A stretch of 64,000 bases of DNA, taken from Adineta vaga. Lineage: Eukaryota; Animalia; Rotifera. Location of the stretch: assembly GCA_021613535.1 (NCBI GenBank), contig CP075495.1, forward strand, positions 7,564,001-7,628,000, in the 5' to 3' direction. Below, piece by piece: positions 783 to 53,653 of this stretch. The translations under genes were made by a program, and so were the position numbers. The notes beneath the pieces are model-generated. The model saw only the letters and a list, made by a program, of their open reading frames with translations. It made no database searches and was not told where the DNA came from. Numbering within the stretch: the first letter of the stretch is position 1; each line of letters starts with the position of its first letter.

Positions 783-3700
783 TCATGTTCGTCGATAGCA
801 TGCTCGCACCCACTGTTGATCATCATGTTGTATACGTACAATTAATTCACGTAATTCAGTATATGTTCGTTCGAGATCATTATTAATTAAAATAGAATCA
901 AATAATAAATAATGATGTCTTTCAATGGATCGACTTTGTCGTATTATTTCTCGATAATCATTATCAGTCAAATGATCACGACGATCTAATTCTAAACGTT
1001 TTAAACGTTCAAACGATGGAGCAGCAATACAGATGATAAATGGATAGAGATCTGTCTTATAAAATGTTCGTATTGCATCTGGATTTAAATTTAATATACA
1101 AATTTTTTGTTTTGCTGAAACAACATGACGAATATCATCGATAGATGTGCCATATAAATCTCGATCATATTGACCAAATTCGACAAATGCATGATTTGCA
1201 ACTTTAGAGAGAAAATCAGTTTCTGATACAAAATGATAATCAATATCAGTTATTTCATGAAGACGACGAGTACGTGTCGTATGTGGAATGGCAACATCGA
1301 AAAGATTTGGTTCAGTTTGAAGAAGACGACGACGTAATTCATGTCGACCAACATTCGGAGCACCTAGAATAAATATTCGTTTAGTATTCTTATAAAATTC
1401 AGAAGAATGTAGATGAATTTCTATTTTATTCACTTACCTAATAGAACAATTGGCCGTGTCATTTGATGTGTGGAAAGATCAAGATGAAAGACAGGTTCAT
1501 AGAAACGAAATGTATCTAATATCGATAAATCAGGAGTCATGTCTTTATTATCATTTATAAATGCTTCATTTGTCTGTGATGGTGGTGATGATGTTGATGG
1601 TTGTTCTTCTCCGATTTGTCGAGTATCTGTTAATGAAAAATGATTAATCGATGGTCGAATTGTTGGTGTTTCGTGATCATCAATTTCACGTAAAAATGAT
1701 GCATTATTATAAACAGGATGTAAAATCTTTCTTTCTTTCTTTGGTACACAAGGAAGACACAATTCATGTTTTTTCTTTTTTCGATTCTTTTGACAAAATA
1801 TGGAGGTTGAAGTTCTTGATGATATTGATTCTGTTTCATCACTAACAGCTTTAATTAATGCTGTACGTTTCTGTTGTAAACCATCGGATGGTACAAGACC
1901 TGCTAAACATGGATCTGTATCTGTCTCTGTGGAATTTTCACGATAAGCTTGCCACCAACTAACTGAAGATTCATGGGATTTGAGGAAATTTTCTTCACGT
2001 GCAACAATACGTAAAATATCACCACGTTGAAACATCAGACCAAGTTCTTTACATGGTAATAATGGATCATTATATGGATCATATGCATATAAAGCACGAA
2101 CATAGAATGTTTGATAGGAAATTTGATTATTATGAATTGATCCGGAATATAATGGTGGAGCAAGAAGAAATTTAATTAAACCAGTCGTAGTTGACATTAA
2201 TGAACAGACGTAATCTAATGAACGACCTGTAATAGATTCATCATTAATTTCCAGTATGCGATCATTAATTTGAAAGAGTTGTGTATTTGCTGCAATACCA
2301 CCGACAACAATTCGAGCGATATGTATTGTACCCGAATCTGAACGAGATATTGTTAAACCTAATGGTTCATGATTTTTTTCAATTTTAACAATTTTCAATT
2401 CGTCAATTGCATACTGAGATAATTTCAATAATTCTTCTGTTGTTTCGGAATTATTTAATTTCATTTCGATATTTTCATCATGATGAGTCATTTGTTCGTC
2501 TGTATCAGGTAAAGCAGGTGGATAAAGACGTAATTTTAAAATATTATCAAATGTTTTGAAAAGACTTTGAATTTCTGTTCGACGTAATAGTGATAAACAT
2601 GTTTTTAAATCATTAAGCATATCAAATAAAGATGGTGATGAAGATCGTGTTGCACTAAAAGTAAAATTTCGTGTAGAAATTATCATCGATCTTTAAACTC
2701 CTTTTTCTCTTAGTAAAGTTAGGTCACCTAATTTCAACATATCTTTACTTTGATATTCAGCGTAAGCTTAGCAATCAAATATTATACTTTTCTCTATAGA
2801 CATTGACAATTAACCTCATTAGTAGATAGAAATAATAAGCGACATCAAACGTGAACTCTACTTTCGATTTTTCAGAATAAATAATAACATACTTTTCATC
2901 AAACATTTGAATTTCAGTATCGATTAATTTCTTTTCAATTAATCCGATAAAATCATCGACTATGTCTTTAAAATCTCGTTCACCATCATTATTATTCATG
3001 ATAATTTCATGAAATAAATCCATAGAACAACCAGTTGCTTGAGTAACAATAGGTAATATATGTAGACTTTGTTGTAATGGACCTTGTTGTGCTATTTCAC
3101 GTAAACGACCAATATCTTCTTTAATCTGATCATCATCCATGTTTAATATTTGTTGAGTTCGATCCAATGTGGTATAGATATCGTCAATTGATATAGTTAA
3201 AATGGGTGATGAAGCACAATGATGTGCACTTGTTGATAAACTACTACTTCGACTAGAAGAATCTGTTCGAATTAGATCGTTATCATGAATATTCTTCTTC
3301 TTTTGAATACCACCACGATGTGTTGACAAGGTACAATAAGCTTCATCAGATGTTTGTGCATCAGGAGATGATCGACTTAAATGACTACTACCACGACGAC
3401 TACTTCGACGAAGTAACGAGTCTCGTTCAAATGCAGTAGGGAGTTGTTTATTCTAGGAATAACATAAGTATATAGAAACAGTGAATAAATCAGTAAGCGA
3501 ATGAAGAGACAACAATGAAGAATGATTATATTGACAAGAAGTAAATGAAAGAAGTTTAGCTTTTAAATAGTGAGAAAAAAAATCCTCGATTTACTAATGA
3601 ATGAAAAAAGAATGTGTTGTAGAAGACAGTAACTTACGAGTGGTTTAAGTCGAAGTAATTCAATGCATTCCACCTTGGAGGCAACAATGTGATGGTCGAC

Positions 3701-3921
3701 GAAATCTTCTTTTGTCGGTGACGAGACATCAAATTCTGCGGGAACATCAACTAAAATGTAGACTAATGATCAACATTCTTGTTTCATTTTCATTATCACA
3801 AACCTGCTCGTTCTCCACCTAACCATTGAATAATTCTTGCTGTTTGATGATTATGTTCTTCTTTGATTTTATTAGTACCACCATGATTGCTAGTATTAAT
3901 CTTGTCGGCTATGGCTACCAT
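783..3921 (-). CDS. PALS1: MAGUK p55-family polarity scaffold (PALS1/MPP5/Stardust-like): PDZ-SH3-HOOK-GK, multi-exon
   Basis: PDZ (KIVKIEKNHEPLGLTI...IARIVVGG...DRILEIN), SH3 (VRALYAYDPYNDPLLPCKELGLMFQRGDILRIV...WWQAYR) and GK (GAPNVGRHELRRRL...AIPHTTR...DYHFVS...EFGQYDRDLYGTS...QQWV). Spliced N-terminal exons (ATG 3921) give ERAVDVPAEF, resembling the PALS1/Sdt Par6-binding ECR1 motif (EMAVDCP). Internal exon borders approximate. Confidence 0.85.
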
Positions 3922-6900
3922 TTCGTGTATGATCAAATGTTCATTTTATGTCGCAAACTTTACTTGCAATCCTACATCAAAGATCAAGGATGAATATTTT
4001 TTCTCACGTAATGAGCTATGAACGCGTGCTTCTACTCCCACTATTGAACAGAAGAATATGTTAAGACATGGTTAAACATTAGTTCGTAGATCTTTTTCTT
4101 CTTTCTTTCAGATGCAAAAAAAAAAGTAAACTATCAAACGAAAAGGAATATTTTTTCGCGTACATACACGTATATATAAATTGATACAATTTCACAATTG
4201 CTACTGACAGTTCATATAAATGAATCAAGACATATGAGATAAGATTTGTGAAAAAAAAATTAGATAGACACGAACAACATCAGTGAGTCTAAGCTCGATG
4301 CAAACAATAATGTTAGCTTTCAATAATTGAACTAATGTCGTCTGTCTTGTCCCGCTTAATCTCACATACACGTCGGTCACTGTCGTCTGCTTTGAATATA
4401 TATATATATCATCAATCTGAACTACTTTAATTATTGTTACTTACCTTGACCAAGAAGAGAAAAAGTGTCAACCTTTTCTTCTTCTTCTTCTTCTTCTTTT
4501 TTTCGTTTCGTCTTATTTTTTTTCCCTCTCTTATGAAATGACTGAACATCGAGACGATCGTGTGAGTCATTACGAAAAGAAAAGAAAACAATCGAGTGTC
4601 ATTCGTCCCTACCGATGATTGTCGTCGTCTTCATATTCTCTTTCATTACAACATTTTCCTTACCTTTTTCTTCTCGATATCCTCCATGTGGAACACAGAT
4701 ATATACCATATATGAACACGAAAAGAGAATGAATTATTTTTCTATCCTTTCGATTCTGTATGGTTGTATGTGTGGGTGTATGTGAAAAGAAAAGATGATG
4801 CTTCGAGTATGAAAACAACCATCTCCTTTGGTTAGAAAGAAGTGACTAGGAAAAGAAAAAGACTTTCAAGTGCATTATTGAGACAACATATACGAAAAGA
4901 AAACTATATAATAACATTCATCATCAATTGATTAAAGTTAAAAAATGATTGATACGAACACTTGAAAGTTTTTCTTAGTAAAAATAAGTAAATGATATTC
5001 AAATATCACAAATGAAGTCTTTCCAAGTATTACATCATATGGTGAACAAATAACAATCTTTTTATAATTCACAATCAAACTTGTTTGTTTTACAGAAACG
5101 ATTCTGATTGATCAATAATGAAAGCTTTTTTTTCAGAACAACAACGAAAGAATAGACTAATTGACTATGCACATTTATTGATTACGTATTTCGTTTATAG
5201 TAAAAGATCAATTAGTTCGAGTAATTTACACTTTCATTTGACAGTTTGTTCAATAATCATACGAATAACTAATGAATCATTTCTGTCTTTGATTCGTCAT
5301 CACCATCTAAAACAATAATATCAACTTGTAGTGGTATCAGATGGAATTATTTATTCATTAACAGCATATGCTCATTGTTAATGAAAGAACTATGTATTCT
5401 TTTGTAAAATTCTGATTCTTATATATTTTTAAATAGATCAAATGAAGTAGAATGTACATAATTCAAAAATGATTTCAGTTTCATGCATTATTCACGTTAT
5501 ATTCATTAATGGACACCACGTTGTCTATTGTATATTCATGTAGTAATTTTTAACTTTTATTTTACATTAAAACTAAATGTTATGAAAAGAAAGGAACTTA
5601 TATCATGATCAGTTCAGATATCAAACTATGAAATTTAGTAACCATATCATCCGACATTGATATATATATATATATCGATAGAATGAAAATGTACTTCTGT
5701 TCTTAATATTTCAAATGATTGTAACATATTTGAAAGAGGAGGAGTTACATCTTTTACTCAATGATTACTTATCTGTGTCTTATACAAAGTAGTTTGGAAG
5801 GATTAATTTTGAACAAAACATGAATGTTAAAAATATTTGTATAAAAAAATATCACAAATGATTATTGCATAACTAAAACGTGATTTCTTATTTCTTCGTC
5901 ATACATACGATAAAAAGAAACGTAGACAGTAGACTCCATTTCTCACCATTTTGTTATTTAATATATTGTGTTATTCTACCATCGTTCATCTATTAATGGT
6001 ATACATCATGTGTGACGAATGGAACAGACATATGAACACATGTTTCCAATTATCATCTTCAATTGAGTAATAAGAAATAACATATATAAAATGATTACAA
6101 TTACAATTTCGAATTCGTTTTTCTTTATTATAAACGTTTTATAGATATCAATTTTTTCGAATAATAAATGTTCGAGTTGAATACAACATTCGAGAAAAAA
6201 CTTTCCATTTGTATTGTAAACTGACAAGGAAATAATTAGTGTTATAGAATTATTATTAAATATTTTACGCGAGATCCTTTTATATCTTCAAGGTTTTGTT
6301 AACCTTTATAAAATTTAGTGGAGCAATTTGAATACATGAGAAAAGAAATCTATTAACTTTCATTGAATATCCATGAAAAATTCAATAAAAATAAAACAAA
6401 AGAATGTTATTAATTCCAAGTAGATAGATATACTAATAATGAAGTCAAATGAATGAATTTATTTTAAATAACAAGGTTAAACATATACACAAATATGAAA
6501 TTTCACAATTTGTCTCTCGAATCTCTTCGTGTTTTTTCTCTCTCTCGAATTTCTCTCAAGAAGATAAACAAAAGATCAAAGACAAACATGGAATGCTATT
6601 ATTAATAAGAATCGAAATATTTTTATATCTCTATCTCTCGAGTTCTCATTCGAAATAAGTAAAAATTTTTTTTGTCAGATGTATACACTGTTTTTTTTTC
6701 TCATTTATTGCACGCGCATACAACACCGAAATAATGACATACAAACAAGAATTGTTGTTGTTTTGTTCTAATAAAAAAAAACCAAAGAAAACACACATAC
6801 ATAGATAGAAACGAAAAGCAATACAAAGAAGAGAAAACAAAAATCGATTACATATCACTGAAATCTCAAAAACAAAATGTCATTGTATGTGAATCATGGG

Positions 6901-7266
6901 ACTTCTTCTTTGTGGTGGTTTCTTTTTCTCTCTCTCTCTTTCTTTTTTATAATACACTTCTTGGAGCAACTGAGTGCGTTACGACTAGTTCGAATGCTTG
7001 AGCAATATTCACACAGTACATAGAAACATAGAGAAATATATGCAATAGAACAAAACGAACAACAACAAAAGACAGAGAAAAACCATGTTGAGCAAAGCAA
7101 GCAACTAAAAACGAAGTCTTTCACAAGACGACAAAGAAGAAAAAATTACAAGATCACCAAATGTTTTTTTTTTCAAAATATCACCTTGGCTAGATAAAAT
7201 GAATGCAACGCAAAAGAAATCAAAAGTAAAAGACATTCTTTTTTTGTTTGCTTGTTTTTTCATTTC

Positions 7267-10200
7267 TCAGGTGAGAATATCAACAAAAGTTGTTGATTCA
7301 TTCGTTGTTTGGTTTGTTTCATCATTACTGTCAATATCTAATCGTATTGCATTTGGTTGAAATTTTTTGGCCAAATGATTATTGTTGTTATTATTATTTG
7401 TGACAATTTTTTGTGGAACTGATTTACGTTTTTTACTACTACTACTACTACATGAATTTGATATTGATGAAACAGGAGGAGGAGTTTTTTGATTATCAAT
7501 TAATGAAACAATATTGGTTGATGTTGCTGATAGACCAAGTGGACTTGTTGAACTGTTCGAATCATTCGTACCATTAAGCCATGAACTAGTTTATTAAATA
7601 GAAAGAGAATAAAGAGATACTAATAAAAAATTGTCTTTGTTTTTGTTTACCTTGTTAATGGTACAATAGTTGGTAAGATTGAATAATCATCTTCGTCATC
7701 ATCATCATCATCATCATCATTTGGGTTATTGTTATTATTATTATTGTTATTATCATCAATATCATCTTCATCATCACTTTGGGCAGGTAATAAATCATCG
7801 TTTAATAATGATGAGGTTGGATATTTACTTGTTGGACTGGATAATGGACGTATATTAGTCTTCGCTCTCATACGAGAATTATGAAACCAATTAGCAATTT
7901 TATTCATTGGTAATGATAAATCAGTAACTAATTGTTCTAATGTTGCTTGAGATGGATAGGGTTCATTTTCAAATGTTTGTTTTAACACACGACGTTGTTC
8001 ATCAGTGAATAAATATCGACGTTTTGGACGATTAGCTGTTGTAGAAGCATTGTTATTACCACTTTCAGAATCGCCATTATCTGCATGGGATATTGCTGCT
8101 GGTGGAGCTGGAGGACGCGAACGACGTAGAGCTAAGAAAAGAAAAATAATTAAATCTGATGAGCAGTTTCTCTATGATTTAGCATCAATAACTTTCTACA
8201 AAACATTGTAGATATTCTACTATAAAATTCAATTTACCATCACGTTCTCGCTTCCATGCAAGTAATTTTTGTACATTGTCTGTATCATTAAACCATGTAT
8301 ACATACGCATGTATGGTTCACGTCCCTTAACACTTAATGAGTGCCACGGGCGAGGTTTCGATAAAATTTCACTAACAGTTCCTTGGGAAAGATTAAGTAC
8401 TGCTTCACCTGAAAAACAGCAAGACCGTTTGAAATATTATAATAAAGATTTATACATACCAAAGACACGTTGTCCAATACTATATGCGAAAAGAAGTTCA
8501 CGTACTTGCGAACTTAATTGTTCAGTATCGATTGAACCTATTGAAATTAAAACAAAACAATTGTTTTCAAAATTAATAAAAAAAAAGGATTAATCTATTA
8601 CTTGGCAATGTTATTTTTGGTAATTCATATGGTGCTAACAATGGATTTGCTGTTGAATGTCGAGATGGATTGGGTGTAGATTTATCGTTATTAGTTTTTG
8701 AGCTTTTTGAGCGAGATTTTGATTTATTGGAATTATTTGTGATACCATTTGATGGTGATGATGATACTGTTGCTGCTGCTGTCGATAGTGTTGATGTAAA
8801 TGGTGTATTTTCATTTGTTGCGATATGTAATGAATCATTATTTGATTGTGAATCGGTGGAATTATCTCTTGTTAAGAGATTATTTGAATGAAAACCATTT
8901 AATGTTGAATTCGATAGAAGTGATGGCGTAGTTAAAACTGATGATGAAGTTGATAATGTTGATGATAAAGGTGGACAGAATGTTGGTAATAATATGGAAC
9001 TTGTATTAGTTGTTGGCGCGGTTGTAACAGTTTGAACAAGTTGTTTGATTGCATTTGGATCATCAAGAAAAATACGCATACGAAGAAATGGTTCTCGACC
9101 TTTCTGTGTCAACAGTTCCCATTGTTTTGGTCGAGCAAGAATATCACTAGAAATTAATTATATTTATTTATCCCATGGAATTTTATGACTTACCTGACAC
9201 TGCCCTGAGATAAGCCAAGAATTTTTTCGCCAAAATGTCGTTGTGATATACTATAACGACTAAGAATATCTTTTACTGTTTGTACTAATTCTATTGTATT
9301 GACGTAACGATATTTGGATGTATCTTGTTCACGTAATGGTGTTAAAGCAGTTTTAATATGTTTCGTCGATGATGATGATGATGATGATGATATTGGTTGT
9401 AGTTGTTTATTGTTGGATAATCTCATTAAAGATGATTCAGAATCATGATGATTTGAATCAAATTTCATACTTAAATCAAGTGGAATTTCATCTGAACTAG
9501 TTGGATTTTCATCATCCATATCATCATCATGGTCATTCCTATCATCATCTCCATCAACATCATCATCATCATCATCATCATCATCTTCGTCATCATCGTC
9601 CTGATTTCCTTGTTCACTTTCTTCATCAGTTTGAATTGGTATTGGAAATGCTGGTTGAAATTGTTTAAGTAAATCATTATTTCGAACAATTTCTTGTAAC
9701 ATTAACCAATTTCGATAATTATCTGGTTGATGACAGAGTAGATTGAATGGTGATGACATCGAACAATCGATTAAATTTCCTGCTATAGATGGTGTAGGCA
9801 ATTCATTTTTCAGGCCATTTGCTGTTCGCATTAGTAATGATGGTACGAATGCAGAAAGCATCGACAGAGATGTTGGTGTAGCGTTTGATGAAGATGTTGC
9901 GAGTGGTGGCGGTGCAATAGGATGTAAAAATTGTTGTTGCTCCAATGCAATTGAATCATTTAGAGGAGAATTTGCTGTAGACGAAGCTGATGATGAAGAC
10001 GGTGTTTTCGATTCAAGTGAGTTGGATGGATCATTGGGTAGAGAACTACATGGAGATAATGAAGATTTTTGTTCCTAAAAATTTAAAAGTAGAATTTTAT
10101 TTTTATAGATGATTTGTTATATTGAAATATGAATATCATGCAATACAACGTTAGTACATTTGTCTAGGAGAGATATTAATTCAATGCATGATATGAAACG

Positions 10201-35624: not shown

Positions 35625-37014
35625 ATGATTATGGAATCTTTTCTAGATGATAGTTTTACAAAAACATTGCCAATGACAAGTCGAAATTTAACTTCAAATT
35701 TTTTGGAATTTCGAAATCGTGCTGCACGAGATAGAAATTTCCATCTTGATGATAAAGTATGTGTTTTTTATCTCTACGTGAGAGAGAGAGAGAGCGAGCA
35801 ACTGATGCCTTTACTTATCTAGTCTAATGATGATCGAACGGCATTAATTCAAAATGAAGACGATGAAGTTGTACAATTCGAAACGGGAAATAAGCCATCA
35901 TGGTATTTATGTTCTTGCGAATTTGGTTTGCAACTTTTGATTGATTTAGGATGGAATCTCAACGTCGACTACAATTGCAATTCGATCAAGTTCGAAGTCG
36001 AAGTAAGGCCATATTAAATCAAATGACATCATAATCTTCATTGTCCAATCAATTTCGTAGTGAAAAAACTTCAACAACTACATGATAAACATTTAACAAG
36101 ACCTGATTTTGATGAAAATTCGAGTGAAGAAAAAGAAATTGAGACTATTACGAAAGACATTACTTCAGTAAGTTTGAACTTTTGTTTTTCTTTAGTAATC
36201 ATAAGATTTGCATTTATTTTTCTATCGATTAGTTATTAAATGGATGTCATGCATCTGTACAACAACTTTCAGCTTATGCAATGAAATCACAAGCTAATAC
36301 ATATGATAAAAGTTTATCTTCTAATGTTGTACAAGCAACAGCAAGTGCTTTACAAGATCTAACGATAAAATTTCGTAAATGTCAGTCTACTTATCTTCAT
36401 AGTAAGTATTTTATAATATATATATTTTCTTTTGTAATCTATCATTGCTTGTCAATTTAGAGTTAAAATCTCGTAAAGAAAATTTCAATCGTATTATGCC
36501 TGATCTCGAAATCGATATGCATTCCAATCCATTTGGTGATCAAGATGATCCTGATAAAAATTTTGATCAAATATCTGTCTGTATTTGTTCTTTTGAAATT
36601 CGTATCTATTCATGTTTCTTTCTATTTAGTTAACTTCCGAAGATCAACTACAATTAACTTCTCAAAATGTTGAATTCTTAGAAAAACGTGATAAAGAAAT
36701 ACGTGAAGTATTACGATCTATTGAAGATGTTAATGAAATCTTTCGTGATGTTGCAGCATTAATTTCTAATCAAGTTCGATCTTTGCATTTTTCTCAAAGA
36801 ATTTAAGAAAAATTTTAATTTTCTATAGGGAACAATTCTCGATCAAATAGAATATAATATAGAAAATACTGTTGTACAACTTGAACAAGGAAACAAACAT
36901 TTAGTTAAAGCAGTTGAACATAAACGACGTGGTCTCAAATGTAAATTAATTTTAATTGGTTCTGTTGTATCCGTCTTATTATTTATCTTATTCGTTGGAA
37001 TTATATCCAGATAG
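35625..37014 (+). CDS. STX16: Syntaxin-16 (Qa SNARE)
   Basis: N-peptide MTSRNLTSNFLEFRN, LHDKHLTRPDFDE, FRKCQSTYL, SNARE motif RDKEIREVLRSIEDVNEIFRDVAALISNQGTILDQIEYNIE, and a C-terminal TM helix. Confidence 0.88.
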
Positions 37015-37296
37015 AACTGAATATATATATAGATGCATTTTTTGCTGTTGTTGTTCTATTCTTCGATAATCTCATTTGAAACCTCCTGAAAAAAGCCAAG
37101 TATAATATTTTTTGTTTCTTATTCACAAACTTCTATTTATTGTCATTTCAATATCAAACGTTGTTGTTTCGTTTGTGTAATTCTTTGTTTTATCTTTTCT
37201 TTTCATTCGAAAAACAAAACAAAATTCCTGGTTATGAAGATCTTCTATTTATTATTATTGTTGTTGTTTTCTTTTCTTTTTCAGATCAGTTTCAAA

Positions 37297-38779
37297 ATGT
37301 TCAAGATATATTTAGTTTTTCTTATCGGATTATTATCTGCAACAATGATTGAATGTGATATTACAAATCTTAATGAATTTTTTGGTACCGTTAAACAAAA
37401 TGAATCTTTCGAACAGCCAGTTGGATTTCTTAGTCGAACAAATTTCGAAGTTGTCAAACGATACTTACCTAAAAATATCAAACCTATACTATTTCAAAAT
37501 AAAAGTCAACTATTAAATGCAATTGATAATAACACCATTCTTGGTATGAAAATATTCATAATGATTTGAATTGATTAGCAAAATATTCTCTTTTTTTCTT
37601 TCAGCTGGTGTAACAACAGGTCGATTAGCACAAGATCTAGAACCACGTTATCATGTTTTTTCTTCATTAATTGTTTCTCCACAAGCTATGCTTTTAACAC
37701 CGAATTATGATGAACGATCAACACCGTATGGCTTTCGAAATCAAGCAAATAATGATCTATTCGATGCCCTCAATGCTGCTATAGCTGGAATGCAAGAAGC
37801 AGATACGGATGAAACATTACTTTCTCTAAATAATCGAACAGATTTAATTCGTGCATATACATGCCGACAAAGTACTCAATTACCAGTACAAAATCGTAAT
37901 GAAACAAGTGGTTTTCTTCGAGATATTCTAATTGATAAAAAACCACTATTAATTGGTGGTCTTGGTCCATTTGATTGGGGCACACATGATGGAAATTATA
38001 ATTTAGATCCACCAACAGGTTTTTACCCAAAATTACTTGAAGAAATTGTCAAACAAATTGGTAAATTAAAAGGAGCTGATGGTAATGTTTATGGTGAAGG
38101 TATTAGTTTCAAACGAATACACTATACAAATGAATCTGGACTTTTTAAAGCTCTACTAAATGGAACTATTTATGCAACAGATGTTTATTTACTCGTCGAT
38201 GGTTCTTATAATGGTACGCGAGAAACATGTTCAAATAACACTCAATGTCGAACAGGAGAATCGTGTGATAAGGAAGTTTGTACATATCCAACACGACCAC
38301 GATATCTTCATTTTCGTACAACATGTACAACAGCAAGTCGTGATACAAAATTTATTACAAAAAAGGTATGTTCTGATTTCTTTTTTTTCCTACAAAATCA
38401 TTTCATTTGTCATATGAATAGAGAAGAAATGATGATATCTTTTTTCTGTCACAGCTGTTTCTATGAATTGTGATTTTTTTCAATGTACTTTTAGAATAAT
38501 GGAATGATAGTTATTCCAAATAATACAACTCGTGAAACACCAAAAACACGTTGGATTGGTTATGTTTTAGTATTTGTTGCTCTTTTTGGTACAATGTTTC
38601 TTATTTTACTTGTGCTCATACGGCGAAAGACAAATTTTCGTATACAACATACATTACAAGGTGGTTTTGGAAAATTTGCTCGTCTTCAAGAAGAAGCTGA
38701 GCCACCAATGGATGGTATTGATGCATTTGAAGATCATATTGTACAATCACCCAGAGACAACAGTAATTCAACATCTTAA
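37297..38779 (+). CDS. Uncharacterised type I membrane protein with a putative solute-binding-protein (PBP2/SBP_bac_3-like) ectodomain; exons 37297-37543, 37605-38365, 38495-38779
   Basis: Signal peptide MFKIYLVFLIGLLSATMIEC; SBP-like segments; a small Cys-rich module; TM helix WIGYVLVFVALFGTMFLILLVLI followed by RRK; acidic tail. Both introns are GT-AG and keep the frame. The gene model is solid; the fold is inferred by eye. Confidence 0.7.
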
Positions 38780-38787
38780 ATGAACAG

Positions 38788-38861
38788 GCTCTTGTGGCGC
38801 AATTGGTTAGCGCGTTCGGCTGTTAACCGGAAGGCTGGTGGTTCGAGCCCACCCAGGAGCG
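38788..38861 (+). tRNA. tRNA-Asn (GTT)
   Basis: Acceptor GCTCTTG/CAGGAGC+G, A box TGGCGCAATTGG, anticodon arm TTCGG-CTGTTAA-CCGGA, T arm GGTGG-TTCGAGC-CCACC, followed by an oligo-T Pol III terminator. Confidence 0.96.
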
Positions 38862-39258
38862 TTACTTTTTTTTCCTAATTTCTACTTCTGAACAGTTTTT
38901 ATCTTTCTCTTTCATCATTTTTCCAATGACCGAATGCGAATCTCTGTGTAACAGTCTTATTTCTAGCTTTGTGTATCTATTATAATGGAAAAACAAATAT
39001 TCTTTTAGCTGTGATAGATCTTCGTAAATCTATTTGTGCGCTATATTATTCATCTTATTCTTTGCCTTTTGCTTGTGTATTCTTTGTATTCGTATATTAA
39101 TATTCTCATCCGGTTAGATATTTTAATAAACGAAAACAAAATTGCAAAGAAAACATCTTGTAAAATTTCGAATATAATTTTTGATTGTGATTGATGTCTC
39201 TATTCAGAGTAATAAGAAAAACACAATTTATATAGAGAAAGAAATCTCATTTGAGCAT

Positions 39259-39332
39259 GCTCTTGTGGCGCAATTGGTTAGCGCGTTCGGCTGTTAACCG
39301 GAAGGCTGGTGGTTCGAGCCCACCCAGGAGCG
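39259..39332 (+). tRNA. tRNA-Asn (GTT), identical second copy
   Basis: Same 74 nt and the same ttac-oligo(T) trailer as 38788-38861. Confidence 0.96.
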
Positions 39333-39790
39333 TTACTTTTTTTCTGCAAAAATTTTTTTTTAATCGATAGGATGGTTATAAATCTTATTCTTTCATTTTC
39401 GAAGTAGTTTTTTTAAAGTTTCAAAGTTCGAAAAAGCTTGATTTTTACATAAAAATAACTTCAACATCAATACATACGTGTTACTGTATACTAAATTTGA
39501 AGAAATAGAGATGTATCAATAATGGAATGATTTTGTTTATGTTTGATGAGTATTGCACAAAGGAAGAGGATTACATTATAAAATTCTCAAGATATGTATC
39601 ATTCATTAGTTTCTCTATTCGAAGTTTACTTGATAAAAGCTTTATTCTCTACCTTTTTTGCAGTAAAGATAAAGTGCATCTACCGTAGTTTATTATAATA
39701 TAAACATTGTTGTATAAAATCGTTCACTCCTTTTACGCTTCACTGATTGTTTGATAAAATTTCAAGTCGGTCACAACGACGACGTGAAAG

Positions 39791-40363
39791 ATGAAGAAAA
39801 GTAACGACCAAAAGAATAATATTATACAACGCTTATTTACTTCAACATTAAAATTTACAAAAAATAACAATGAGACTCATTTGAAACCATTAGATTATCA
39901 GTTCAATTATGAATTACCTGAAAGTTTCCTCAAAGCTGTCGACAGTGCTCGTATCAAAGCGGGATATGATATTCTACCTCGTCCTCTTCATCATCACCAA
40001 TCAACTTCACCATCATTATCATCCTCTTCATCAGCTCATGATACTTATAAATATCTTCAAACAGTTTCTGAAATCTTTCGTTCAACATCTCATGATGATG
40101 TTCCTCGGATTTCAACGAAAAAAATTCAATTTCGTCGAACACCTCGTGAAAAAGTTCAACAACAGCATCATCACAACAACAGCACCTGCTTTACTTTCAC
40201 CTCAACCAACAACATTTCGAATGATGATGCCGCAAAATTTCATGATGATGAATCGTTGTCGTCGACCTTTACATTTTATGCCAATGCAATCTCCACTACA
40301 TATGCAACAACAACGACGACCAATATTCCGAATAAGATTTTGATAATAAAAAGAAATATTTAA
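39791..40363 (+). CDS. Hypothetical protein, 190 aa, Ser/Thr/His-rich
   Basis: Uninterrupted ORF with coding-like composition in very AT-rich flanks; no recognisable motif. Confidence 0.45.
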   Translation: MKKSNDQKNNIIQRLFTSTLKFTKNNNETHLKPLDYQFNYELPESFLKAVDSARIKAGYDILPRPLHHHQSTSPSLSSSSSAHDTYKYLQTVSEIFRSTSHDDVPRISTKKIQFRRTPREKVQQQHHHNNSTCFTFTSTNNISNDDAAKFHDDESLSSTFTFYANAISTTYATTTTTNIPNKILIIKRNI

Positions 40364-40691
40364 AAACTTGATCTTTCAATTGATTGTTTATTAGTGACAT
40401 CTTTATAAAAAAAAGAATAAAATTTTATCAATTAAATATAGTATAAATTTTATATTATTTCATGAAATTTTATCTCATTTATATTCTATACAATCTATTC
40501 ATATTCTTCATATCATCTTTTTAATATCTTTTTTTAATAATCATCATAGATTTCCAATCATTTTTCTCTCCATATTTTACGTCTATTTATTTTTACCTAT
40601 ATGCTTGCTTAACTATCGTCGATCTTTTTCTAATATATACAAAGAAAAATAACAGCATCGCGACTAGTCTCGCGATAATTTTCTTCACAAA

Positions 40692-52023: not shown

Positions 52024-52347
52024 ATGTTTTCATCAACAATCGTTTGCAACATTGTACGAATATACATGGCTTTATTAGTAGTAAATATTGTCTTTGGCTT
52101 TGATGAAATATCTGATGACAATCGACGATTTAATTCGTTATTAAAGCAACGTTCAGCAGAAAATGATAATGAGTATGTTTGGTTTACACGTGATCTTCAT
52201 AATACTATGGTTAATGACGATGCTCGTGAATTAATCAAACGTGGATCCTTGGGTAAATTTCAACATTTACCTCGTCCAAAAACGAACAATCCTGGTAGTT
52301 CACGCAAATATCGATCAATTCAAAAGTCTATGAATCAATTCCAATGA
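52024..52347 (+). CDS. Secreted peptide (neuropeptide-like) precursor A
   Basis: Hydrophobic signal region; RR, KR and RK sites; QRSAENDNEYVWFTRDLH shared with the downstream paralog; TATA-like box ~51918; AATAAA just after the stop. Confidence 0.7.
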   Translation: MFSSTIVCNIVRIYMALLVVNIVFGFDEISDDNRRFNSLLKQRSAENDNEYVWFTRDLHNTMVNDDARELIKRGSLGKFQHLPRPKTNNPGSSRKYRSIQKSMNQFQ

Positions 52348-53101
52348 AAAATGAAGAAATAAAATTAATCTTTCAAAAATCGTTTTAATTGTTGTAAAAT
52401 CCTATATATTCAAAGATATTTTTTCAAAGTCGGCCAAAGAAAATGAAGTATCATCTGATTTTTCATTCCATCTAGTACTCTTTTGTTTTCTGTAGTGAAC
52501 AAAATAAAATATCCATTCGAATGTATTTGCCGAACTAATAATCTTATGTCTTTCATTCTCTTCAAAAAAAAAAACAAAGTCAGATATTATCTACTGTTTA
52601 CGAGCACATCCCCTAGAAAATTCACTGAAGGGAAAGCATTTTGTTAATTATCATGTCTCTGACGATAGCATACTACCTGGCAAGAAAAAACAGCACATAG
52701 AACGTCATTTGAATATTAATTTTCATCTGTCAAATTCATATTTAAAGACTACTTTATCTGAGATCTAAAGAGTGATAGTAGACAAACAGATACTTTGATT
52801 GCTAACAACGAATCATATAAATTATTTTACGGGAGTATTATTCAATCTCTCAATACATTGATTTTAGTTGGCGGAAAATGTTCTTGTCGATTACGAATGC
52901 AAAAGATAAGCTATTTCATGTATATTATCAAACAAAAATAGTTCATCCTAGCCGCCTAAAGTATATGAGATTTACAATAGCTATAGGTAGACATTTTAAT
53001 TAAAATTGACTTTTTCTATTATTTTGCACCTTTATATTTACTTACATGTCATTTGATCAATTATATCCATTTTGAAAACTATGATAATTCTATATTGTAG
53101 T

Positions 53102-53113
53102 AAATAACTGACG
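53102..53113 (+). promoter_or_regulatory. Second AAATAACTGACG element (CRE half-site)
   Basis: Same 12-mer and near-identical spacing to the ATG at 53318. Confidence 0.5.
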
Positions 53114-53317
53114 TGTCAACATAGAGATACACATAAAGAGAGAAAAATCAAGTATCTCTACTATACGTGCTATTTATTCTGATTAATGATTTTTTCCTAT
53201 GATAAAAGGAAATTTAAGCAATAGAACATGACACATTTCTCCGTTTTTTTATTTCTATTCACACACGTATTGTGACATAAATTTTGACAAGTTAGCATTT
53301 CCTCAACTATTACAAAA

Positions 53318-53653
53318 ATGATCACATCCGGAATCCGAAACATTATCCAATTCTTTTGTATTCTAATATTATTCAATATGATAGCTGCTGTTTATCTAAA
53401 TCCTCGTGAACATCGACATCCATACGTATACAACAATCAACGATCTGCTGATAGTGGATACAGATACGCTTGGTTTACTAGAGATATTCATGATGATCCA
53501 GATAGAGATGATGGAAACAATTCTTTAGAACAGCAACGAGAACAACAATTATCTCCACAAGAAACTCTTCGTCTGAAAACGCCCAAAAGTATTTTCAATC
53601 GACAATATCAAAATAATGACGAGACTATGGTCGAATCAAATGAAAATCGTTAA
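53318..53653 (+). CDS. Secreted peptide (neuropeptide-like) precursor B
   Basis: Signal peptide (IIQFFCILILFNMIAA); QRSADSGYRYAWFTRDIH; AATAAA after the stop. Confidence 0.7.
   Translation: MITSGIRNIIQFFCILILFNMIAAVYLNPREHRHPYVYNNQRSADSGYRYAWFTRDIHDDPDRDDGNNSLEQQREQQLSPQETLRLKTPKSIFNRQYQNNDETMVESNENR

What the first reader, a model, noticed from the sequence alone, without database searches (positions are those of the whole stretch)
37297..38779. Animal cell-surface protein built from an apparently circularly permuted bacterial-type solute-binding protein
Seen: signal peptide, ectodomain, one TM helix and a short acidic tail. In family-3 amino-acid-binding proteins (SBP_bac_3/PBP2) the canonical order is [substrate strand..PF..GFDvDL..ALqSGkiD], then [VGV..GT..eeal.Al..G], then [eLl.aiNkAl..l..dG]. 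Here the second and third blocks come first (VGFLSRTNFEVVKRYLP...SQLLNAIDNN; NDLFDALNAAIAGMQEADT; ~37417-37820). The normally N-terminal block follows (LRDILIDKKPLLIGGLGPF...TGFYPKLLEEIVKQIG...SGLFKALLNGTIYAT; ~37915-38190). A small Cys module (CSNNTQCRTGESCDKEVC) sits before the membrane. It lacks the pore helices of iGluRs/IRs, the usual animal carriers of this fold. Inference: a horizontally acquired, permuted, intron-bearing ligand sensor or nutrient-capture receptor.
Basis: partly seen in the sequence, partly recalled or inferred. Interest (0 to 1): 0.8.

Follow-up and report, generated by a model that had tools for sequence, protein, structure and literature searches.

The report
Circularly permuted Venus-flytrap membrane protein
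This Adineta vaga (rotifer) gene encodes a cell-surface protein whose ligand-binding "Venus flytrap" domain is a bacterial-type solute-binding fold with its halves in swapped order, and it belongs to an old, almost unstudied eukaryotic family (the malaria protein PfVFT1 is the only studied member) rather than being a recent bacterial import.

Summary
Window 37297-38779 (+) is a three-exon gene of Adineta vaga. It encodes a 430-aa type I membrane protein: signal peptide, ectodomain, four-Cys module, one TM helix and a conserved acidic tail.

It is circularly permuted. Against an E. coli HisJ/GlnH/ArtJ profile, the native order gives two out-of-order matches. Swapping the halves in silico gives one collinear match of 202 columns (P 1e-10).

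The same family holds the other order (A-B, as in PfVFT1). The B-A and A-B profiles match in swapped order at E 2e-51 and 8e-25. Tandem BABA and ABAB members also exist.

The horizontal-transfer reading is not supported as stated. I found no bacterial relatives. The family (181 clusters, no Pfam entry) occurs in dinoflagellates, Blastocystis, green algae, Amoebozoa, CRuMs, apicomplexans and a giant-virus contig. It also occurs in other spiralian animals: Brachionus, Owenia and Lingula. Bdelloid sequences group with the Brachionus clade.

The ligand and the output are unknown. No RNA reads could be laid.

The parts
37297..37543 (+). Exon 1. It holds the signal peptide (about 37297-37356, MFKIYLVFLIGLLSATMIEC) and the first part of lobe B, which corresponds to lobe 2 of canonical SBP_bac_3 (motifs I-x-N-L-x-E-F, VGFLSRTNFEVVKRYLP).
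   Evidence: junction confirmed by P0190 and by Rotaria orthologues; hhalign to HisJ-family columns 122-215.
37544..37604 (+). Intron 1 (61 nt, GT..AG, phase 1, inside the codon of Ala83).
   Evidence: The ORFs called in bdelloid metagenome contigs start just after this point, so the intron is probably shared among bdelloids.
37605..37687 (+). End of lobe B (GVTTG ... HVFSSLIVSPQAML), running into the second hinge strand.
   Evidence: AF2 model m7ad5594e2840 has a long strand at residues 82-94 in P0190 numbering; hhalign.
37688..37828 (+). Hinge-2 region and the two helices (NDLFDALNAAIAGMQEADTDETLL) that correspond to the C-terminal helix of canonical SBP_bac_3.
   Evidence: hhalign of this segment alone to HisJ-family columns 215-248, P 7.4e-6.
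37829..37909 (+). Family-specific linker joining the 'C-terminal' helix to the 'N-terminal' lobe. It contains the invariant Cys169 (YTC) and Pro178.
   Evidence: Invariant columns in alignment A4. The linker is present in both the B-A and A-B forms.
37910..38221 (+). Lobe A, which corresponds to the N-terminal lobe 1 of canonical SBP_bac_3 (LLIGGLGPFDWGTHDGNY..TGFYPKLLEEIVKQIG; ISFKR; GLFKALLNGTIYATDVY).
38228..38281 (+). Four-Cys module (C291, C297, C303, C308). It is an insertion found only in one clade of the family.
   Evidence: Weak EB-module and DUF7107 matches. Alignment A4 shows it absent from many B-A members. The clade that has it is supported 100/100.
38294..38365 (+). RPRYLHFRTTCTTASRDTKFITKK: the first hinge strand and a final beta strand that returns to lobe B. 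It contains Arg315, which aligns by transitivity with the carboxylate-binding Arg of HisJ, and the invariant Cys323.
   Evidence: Strand 310-319 of the model in P0190 numbering. LysR-type domains align to model residues 18..323 across both lobes. hhalign pR to eR and B-A to A-B.
38366..38494 (+). Intron 2 (129 nt, GT..AG, phase 0).
   Evidence: junction FITKK|NNGM in P0190.
38495..38779 (+). Exon 3. It holds a short N-glycosylated stalk (38495-38551), the TM helix (38552-38620), and a cytoplasmic tail of 52 aa (38621-38776) with QGGFGKFARL and an acidic stretch, followed by the stop codon at 38777-38779.
   Evidence: hydrophobicity of orthologue P0004. The tail, including the ending DNxNSTS, is conserved in Rotaria and Adineta.

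Best explanation
The gene encodes a glycosylated type I membrane protein of Adineta vaga. Its whole ectodomain is one Venus-flytrap module of the type II periplasmic-binding-protein (SBP_bac_3-like) fold. The order of the chain is: lobe 2, second hinge strand, the helix that is C-terminal in bacterial proteins, a new Cys-containing linker, lobe 1, a four-Cys insert, the first hinge strand, and one strand that goes back into lobe 2. A stalk, a TM helix and a conserved tail follow. This is an exact circular permutation of the canonical order, and also of the A-B order seen in the only studied relative, Plasmodium falciparum PfVFT1.

Shown: the fold, the permutation, the family and its distribution.

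Inferred, origin: the permutation arose by tandem duplication and trimming. Both orders share the same new linker, and tandem BABA and ABAB members exist. It arose long before rotifers, in an old eukaryotic family of membrane-anchored or GPI-type flytrap proteins. Bdelloids inherited the gene from a rotifer ancestor, and probably from a spiralian one.

Inferred, function: a small solute, probably carrying a carboxylate or another anionic group, binds in the cleft between the lobes and closes them. An Arg aligned with the carboxylate-binding Arg of HisJ is kept, whereas the Asp that holds the alpha-amino group is Ser or Thr. The movement or occupancy is then read out through the stalk, TM helix and conserved cytoplasmic tail, so the protein acts as a receptor. 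Less likely, the protein hands the ligand to a partner in the membrane.

The confidence given (0.75) is for the statement as a whole. The fold, the permutation and the family membership alone I put at about 0.9, and the receptor mechanism at about 0.45.
For: Gene model.

Permutation against canonical SBP_bac_3: two out-of-order hhalign matches in native order become one 202-column match (P 1.2e-10, probability 97) after swapping the halves.

Permutation against the A-B relatives: E 2e-51 and 7.6e-25 in swapped order, and one 273-column match at E 1.6e-77 after re-cutting. Among members with sub-HMM matches, 69 are B-A, 26 are A-B and 6 are four-segment tandems.

Distribution and descent. Bdelloids plus the Brachionus clade are supported 94/95, Lingula plus Owenia 100/98, and the Cys-module clade 100/100. 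An all-animal clade is present in the ML tree. The SNARE neighbour gene is conserved within Adineta.

Ligand clues: pR aligns with eR; Asp column aligns with Ser/Thr.
Against: No member of the family has a known ligand or function. The PfVFT1 literature that I could read says its function is unknown (PMC13199436).

Pfam SBP_bac_3 is not matched above threshold. The best result is E 0.057, in 2 of 20 members.

The residue equivalences rest on alignments at about 20% identity.

I had no model coordinates, so the pairing of the last strand with lobe B is inferred from aligned ranges only.

The animal genes of Owenia, Lingula and Brachionus are intronless, and the distribution among animals looks patchy. 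Transfer between eukaryotes is therefore not excluded.

The support for a single animal clade is weak (49/27).

No RNA evidence was obtained.
Confidence: 0.75

Rival explanations
1. One reading: a bacterial solute-binding gene was transferred horizontally into bdelloid rotifers. It was then permuted, gained introns and was fused to a membrane anchor.
For: Bdelloids are known for many foreign genes (established knowledge). The fold is of a bacterial type. The gene has only two short introns.
Against: The exhaustive profile search gave only family members, and no bacterial protein was identified among them. Named members are all eukaryotes. The contigs I checked carry eukaryotic or giant-virus genes. 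The same B-A order, Cys module and TM anchor occur in Rigifila, Mastigamoeba, Owenia, Lingula and Brachionus. The permutation and the anchor are therefore older than rotifers.
Confidence: 0.03
2. Eukaryote-to-animal transfer: the animal copies come from one or several transfers from protists, possibly carried by giant viruses, into spiralian lineages, rather than from vertical descent in animals.
For: The Owenia, Lingula and Brachionus genes are intronless single ORFs. Among named animals only spiralians are seen. One B-A member lies beside an NCLDV major capsid gene. Inside the Cys-module clade, the relations among animals, Rigifila and Mastigamoeba are an unresolved polytomy.
Against: The two animal subclades match animal relationships: brachiopod with annelid at 100/98, and bdelloids with the monogonont clade at 94/95. 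The ML tree places all animal rows on one side of a branch. Most database members are unnamed, so absence from other animals is not shown.
Confidence: 0.25
3. The domain has the flytrap fold but does not act as a small-molecule receptor. It could be a structural or adhesive surface glycoprotein, or a tethered binding protein that serves a transporter or an enzyme.
For: PfVFT1 has no known ligand and is discussed only as a surface antigen (PMC13199436). The Asp that binds the alpha-amino group in amino-acid-binding proteins is not kept. Many members end in a GPI-like signal and have no cytoplasmic tail, which does not fit transmembrane signalling.
Against: Residues around the predicted cleft are nearly invariant across very distant taxa: W191, G196, Y198, R237 and Y261 in P0190 numbering, and the RPR arginine. 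The juxtamembrane motif RE[KR]xGxPxF (G-x3-F-x2-L in bdelloids) and the bdelloid tail are conserved. This suggests a cytoplasmic partner.
Confidence: 0.25

Closest known systems
PfVFT1 (Plasmodium falciparum PF3D7_0606800, PDB 5jkq; Parker et al. 2017, Protein Sci 26:1878, cited in PMC13199436)
   Different: The domain order is swapped: PfVFT1 is A-B and the rotifer protein is B-A. No membrane anchor has been found in PfVFT1 (PMC13199436), whereas the rotifer protein has a TM helix and a tail. PfVFT1 also lacks the four-Cys insert.
Bacterial family 3 solute-binding proteins (Pfam PF00497 SBP_bac_3: HisJ, ArgT, GlnH, ArtJ, TcyJ)
   Same: Same type II PBP fold. Profile-profile homology extends over the whole domain once the halves are swapped (P 1.2e-10). 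The motifs G-F-x-x-D/P-[LY], L-x-x-G-x-[IV]-[DH]-A and N-x-A-[LI] are shared, as is the aligned carboxylate-binding Arg.
   Different: The order is circularly permuted, with the cut after the first strand of lobe 2. There is no Pfam match above threshold. The protein is membrane-anchored in a eukaryote with no ABC importer partner known. The Asp that binds the alpha-amino group is replaced by Ser or Thr.
Ligand-binding core (S1S2) of ionotropic glutamate receptors
   Same: The usual animal carrier of the SBP_bac_3-type flytrap. It is extracellular and tied to the membrane.
   Different: In iGluRs the flytrap is interrupted by the pore domain but is not permuted. This protein has a single TM helix and no pore. 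The genome's own iGluR-like loci, at least 35 of them and mostly open frames of 840-990 aa, hit PF00497, while this gene does not.
Effector-binding domains of LysR-type regulators; periplasmic flytrap domains of the BvgS/EvgS sensor kinases
   Different: There is no sequence relationship beyond the fold. Those are bacterial proteins with kinase or DNA-binding outputs, which this protein lacks.

Membership tests
SBP_bac_3 (PF00497) / type II periplasmic binding proteins | Match to the Pfam model above its gathering score | tested here: not met
   No hit on any exon. Among 20 diverse family members, only 2 gave weak hits, with a best E of 0.057.
SBP_bac_3 (PF00497) / type II periplasmic binding proteins | Two alpha/beta lobes joined by two hinge strands (type II fold) | tested here: met
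   AF2 model with pLDDT 91.6. The nearest Atlas shapes are all SBP_bac_3, with TM 0.52-0.61 by the query and 0.64-0.76 by the target for the single-domain matches. LysR and SBP chains align over model residues 18..323. See also Foldseek.
SBP_bac_3 (PF00497) / type II periplasmic binding proteins | Canonical order: lobe 1a, lobe 2, lobe 1b with the C-terminal helix | tested here: not met
   hhalign gives two out-of-order matches. They become one collinear match only after the halves are swapped.
SBP_bac_3 (PF00497) / type II periplasmic binding proteins | Residues that hold an alpha-amino acid (Arg for the carboxylate, Asp for the ammonium group, as in HisJ R77 and D161) | tested here: inconclusive
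   The Arg is kept by transitive alignment. The Asp column holds Ser or Thr. The alignments are at about 20% identity.
SBP_bac_3 (PF00497) / type II periplasmic binding proteins | Works with an ABC importer or another membrane partner | not testable with these tools
   No partner can be inferred from sequence. The neighbouring genes are a SNARE gene and tRNA genes.
PfVFT1-like eukaryotic flytrap family (no Pfam entry) | Significant sequence homology to PfVFT1 and its relatives | tested here: met
   E 9e-10 to 5jkq. hhalign to the A-B profile gives E 2e-51 and 7.6e-25.
PfVFT1-like eukaryotic flytrap family (no Pfam entry) | Structural match to the 5jkq crystal structure | tested here: met
PfVFT1-like eukaryotic flytrap family (no Pfam entry) | Same order of segments as PfVFT1 (A then B) | tested here: not met
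   The rotifer protein is B then A. It belongs to the B-A branch of the family, with 69 such members against 26 A-B members.
PfVFT1-like eukaryotic flytrap family (no Pfam entry) | Signal peptide, plus a C-terminal TM helix with juxtamembrane RE[KR]xGxPxF or a GPI-like tail | tested here: met
   Signal peptide and TM helix are present. In bdelloids the motif is altered to G-F-G-K-F-A-R-L and shifted.
Ionotropic glutamate receptors | Pore-forming membrane segments between the two halves of the flytrap | tested here: not met
   There is one TM helix only, after the complete domain.

The most novel reading that the evidence does not exclude
This is the animal branch of an unrecognised, eukaryote-wide class of single-pass Venus-flytrap receptors. 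Natural circular permutation by tandem duplication produced two coexisting domain orders, and tandem members still exist that show the duplication step this route needs. In spiralian animals the B-A form with the Cys insert would serve as a chemoreceptor or nutrient sensor that signals through its conserved tail. Giant viruses also carry members and may have moved the family between lineages.
Probability: 0.3. Interest if true: 0.75.

Novelty: new variant of a known kind. Interest (0 to 1): 0.6.

Why it matters
Type II binding proteins are a textbook fold for transport, sensing, iGluR evolution and biosensor design. Circular permutants of them are usually made in the laboratory.

Here one natural family holds both orders, with the junctions mapped to the residue, and also holds tandem forms that show the duplication step. 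It is a clean case for how permutation arises.

The result also gives a family context to PfVFT1, a malaria surface antigen of unknown function.

Finally, it shows that animals other than vertebrates' usual models carry a second, non-channel way of putting a bacterial-type flytrap on the cell surface. A ligand for any member would open the function of the whole family.

Tried and rejected
- Direct Pfam and NCBIfam scans of the three exons gave only weak Cys-module hits.
- The first exhaustive-search call failed and was repeated.
- The first AF2 model, of the Rotaria orthologue with bdelloid rows only, was mediocre (pLDDT 76). Its VIA rows aligned one lobe only. I replaced it with a model of the window's own ectodomain built on a diverse alignment.
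- A word-based search with the family alignment saturated at 8000 candidates and returned almost only bdelloids.
- Contig look-ups of the closest unnamed relatives gave no taxonomy.
- The PfVFT1 structure paper (PMC5563136) is not held. I therefore could not see whether its authors noted a permutation.
- Literature searches found nothing on animal homologues or on natural permutants of this fold.
These places lie in the tRNA gene just downstream. Splicing and the 3' end therefore have no read support here. The word shares do not separate RNA from DNA.
I searched the exons by reference, and the database proteins P0004 and P0190 stood in for the spliced product.
- The idea that the protein is an iGluR fragment was rejected.
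- The notes search by words found nothing.

Full report
**What is in the window.** Reading 36800-39300 and translating the three open stretches gives a clean eukaryotic gene on the + strand. Exon 1 is 37297-37543. A GT..AG intron of 61 nt follows. Exon 2 is 37605-38365. A GT..AG intron of 129 nt follows. Exon 3 is 38495-38779, including the stop. The product has 430 residues.

The protein has these parts, in order:
- a hydrophobic signal sequence;
- an ectodomain of about 315 residues with many N-x-S/T sites;
- a four-Cys module;
- a short stalk;
- one TM helix;
- a 52-residue acidic tail.

I searched them by reference. Two database proteins stand in for the spliced product. One is the Rotaria socialis orthologue P0004. 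The other is P0190, 'hypothetical protein I4U23_008116 [Adineta vaga]'. P0190 is 100% identical to exon 2 and has exactly my two junctions. The window is therefore A. vaga (G000: 100.8 Mb in 6 contigs).

P0190 starts at the second Met, so it lacks the signal peptide. It also leaves the gene five codons before the stop and continues in ORFs at 39893-40201 and 40550-40609, beyond two tRNA-Asn genes. The Rotaria and A. steineri orthologues end in DNxNSTS like my model. I therefore take the annotated 3' end to be a chimera.

**Fold.** Pfam and NCBIfam see nothing but a weak Cys-module resemblance. A profile of the bdelloid orthologues hits one solved structure, PfVFT1 of Plasmodium falciparum (5jkq), at E 9e-10. 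It hits in two pieces whose order is swapped.

An AlphaFold model of the window's own ectodomain (P0190:1-340), built on a 62-row alignment, is confident (pLDDT 91.6, pTM 0.88). The structure searches agree with one another:
- Foldseek gives 5jkq at E 2e-7, followed by amino-acid binding proteins, GluR0 and EvgS.
- The nearest ESM-Atlas shapes are all SBP_bac_3 clusters, with 213-255 aligned residues and TM up to 0.76 by the target.
- Language-model look-alikes point the same way, but only as a lead.

The ectodomain is a type II PBP, or Venus flytrap.

**Permutation.** I built a reference alignment of six E. coli family 3 binding proteins: HisJ, ArgT, GlnH, ArtJ, ArtI and TcyJ. I compared it with the family alignment by hhalign.

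In native order there are two separate matches. The family's N-terminal part matches canonical columns 122-253 (P 5e-7). The later part matches columns 26-114 (P 5.7e-4). I then moved the alignment columns so that the second half came first. The result is one collinear alignment of 202 columns over canonical columns 26-251, with P 1.2e-10 and probability 97.

The chain order is therefore:
1. lobe 2 without its first strand;
2. hinge strand 2;
3. the 'C-terminal' helix;
4. a new linker with an invariant Cys;
5. lobe 1;
6. the Cys insert;
7. hinge strand 1;
8. the first strand of lobe 2.

I infer the return of the last strand to the first lobe from the aligned ranges. I had no coordinates.

**The family.** An exhaustive profile search of 1.84 billion representatives found 181 proteins. 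Sub-HMMs for the two halves show three kinds of arrangement among proteins with sub-HMM matches. There are 69 with the rotifer order (B-A), 26 with the PfVFT1 order (A-B), and 6 four-segment tandems (4 BABA, 2 ABAB).

Profile against profile, B-A and A-B match in swapped order at E 2e-51 and 7.6e-25. After re-cutting they match in one piece of 273 columns at E 1.6e-77. The C-terminus of one form abuts the N-terminus of the other to the residue.

Both forms share several features:
- the signal peptide;
- the new linker with its Cys;
- a C-terminal TM helix with a juxtamembrane RE[KR]xGxPxF motif, or instead a GPI-like tail.

The A-B form is itself a rotation of the canonical order: its first helix matches the last helix of HisJ. 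This pattern is what duplication followed by trimming would give. In the tandem members, however, the two units are each other's closest relatives. They are therefore recent duplications, which illustrate the route but are not the ancestral intermediates.

**Who has it.** Named members are listed below.

| Order | Named members |
|---|---|
| A-B | P. falciparum, Piridium, Blastocystis, Chloroparvula |
| B-A | Gymnodinium, Rigifila, Mastigamoeba, all bdelloid genera sampled (Adineta, Rotaria, Didymodactylos), the monogonont Brachionus plicatilis, the annelid Owenia fusiformis (two loci on chromosome-scale contigs), the brachiopod Lingula anatina |

One B-A member lies next to an NCLDV major capsid gene. 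Other contigs that I checked carry eukaryotic-type genes. I saw no bacterial context.

In a careful tree the Cys-insert clade is supported 100/100. Inside it, Lingula groups with Owenia (100/98). Bdelloids group with the Brachionus clade and two unnamed rows (94/95). Rigifila, Mastigamoeba and unnamed rows form a third group. All animal rows sit on one side of a branch in the ML tree, but with weak support (49/27). A rotifer-only clade is not rejected (p-AU 0.475).

The Owenia, Lingula and Brachionus genes are intronless, and Lingula has a tandem pair. The A. vaga gene has two introns. The SNARE gene just upstream is also its neighbour in A. ricciae and A. steineri. Only one copy is found in the haploid assembly.

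**Reading.** The horizontal-transfer inference is not supported as written. The permutation, the anchor and the Cys insert are all older than rotifers, and the nearest relatives are eukaryotes. Vertical descent within Rotifera is well supported. A single origin in animals is compatible with the data but not shown. Transfer from protists, or through giant viruses, into early spiralian lineages stays open at about one in four.

**Function.** Nothing is known for any member. The PfVFT1 literature that I could read calls its function unknown. By transitive alignment, Arg315 of the window protein sits at the place of the carboxylate-binding Arg of HisJ. The Asp that holds the amino group is Thr87 here, and Ser in most members. 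Several cleft-side residues are nearly invariant across kingdoms. The tail is strongly conserved among bdelloids.

I therefore favour a membrane-tethered sensor for a small, probably anionic, solute that reports through its tail. I put this at moderate confidence only.

**Limits.**
I sent none of those letters to a search tool afterwards, and I have no read-level support for splicing or expression.
- Most family members are unnamed metagenome proteins, so the taxonomic range is a lower bound.
- The Parker et al. 2017 paper could not be read.

Noticed in passing
window 38788-38861 and 39258-39333; 39893-40201 and 40550-40609: Two tRNA-Asn(GTT) genes lie directly after the stop codon. The public A. 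vaga gene model P0190 skips the last five codons and the stop. It then reads on into ORFs about 1.1-1.8 kb downstream, across both tRNA genes. This is probably a chimeric annotation.
   Followed up: partly
window 36829-37015 (+): The last exon of a SNARE-domain, tail-anchored (syntaxin-like) gene ends 280 nt upstream of the start codon (PF05739, E 4e-13). In A. ricciae and A. steineri the public models fuse this SNARE gene with the flytrap gene (P0189, P0191). The neighbourhood is therefore conserved within Adineta.
   Followed up: partly
G000, 35 places, e.g. L005-L014 (C3:18939043-18940074, C1:11508075-11509034): The genome holds at least 35 loci that match SBP_bac_3 above threshold. Most lie inside uninterrupted open frames of 840-990 aa, which look like a large set of intron-poor iGluR-like genes.
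   Followed up: no
contig of P0060 (ENA ERZ24794637, 22.8 kb; no DNA served): A B-A member of the family lies about 3.8 kb downstream of an NCLDV major capsid gene (Capsid_NCLDV, Capsid_N) on a densely packed contig. Giant viruses therefore carry this flytrap family. The contigs of P0101 and P0199 are similarly compact, with ATG8, RFC, kinases and PP2C.
   Followed up: partly
L020 (Lingula anatina LFEI02000301.1) 3001-4281, 6979-7278, 7935-9207: There are two intronless tandem copies, 95-100% identical to P0203, with a fragment between them. The public gene range spans both.
   Followed up: no
P0040, P0046, P0049, P0055, P0072, P0107 (metagenome proteins): These family members have two complete flytrap units in tandem (BABA or ABAB). 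P0040 has two Cys inserts. The two units of each protein are each other's closest relatives.
   Followed up: partly
window 52024-53653: Another first-stage note on this window proposes a tandem pair of peptide precursors (s1-483014). I did not look at it.
   Followed up: no
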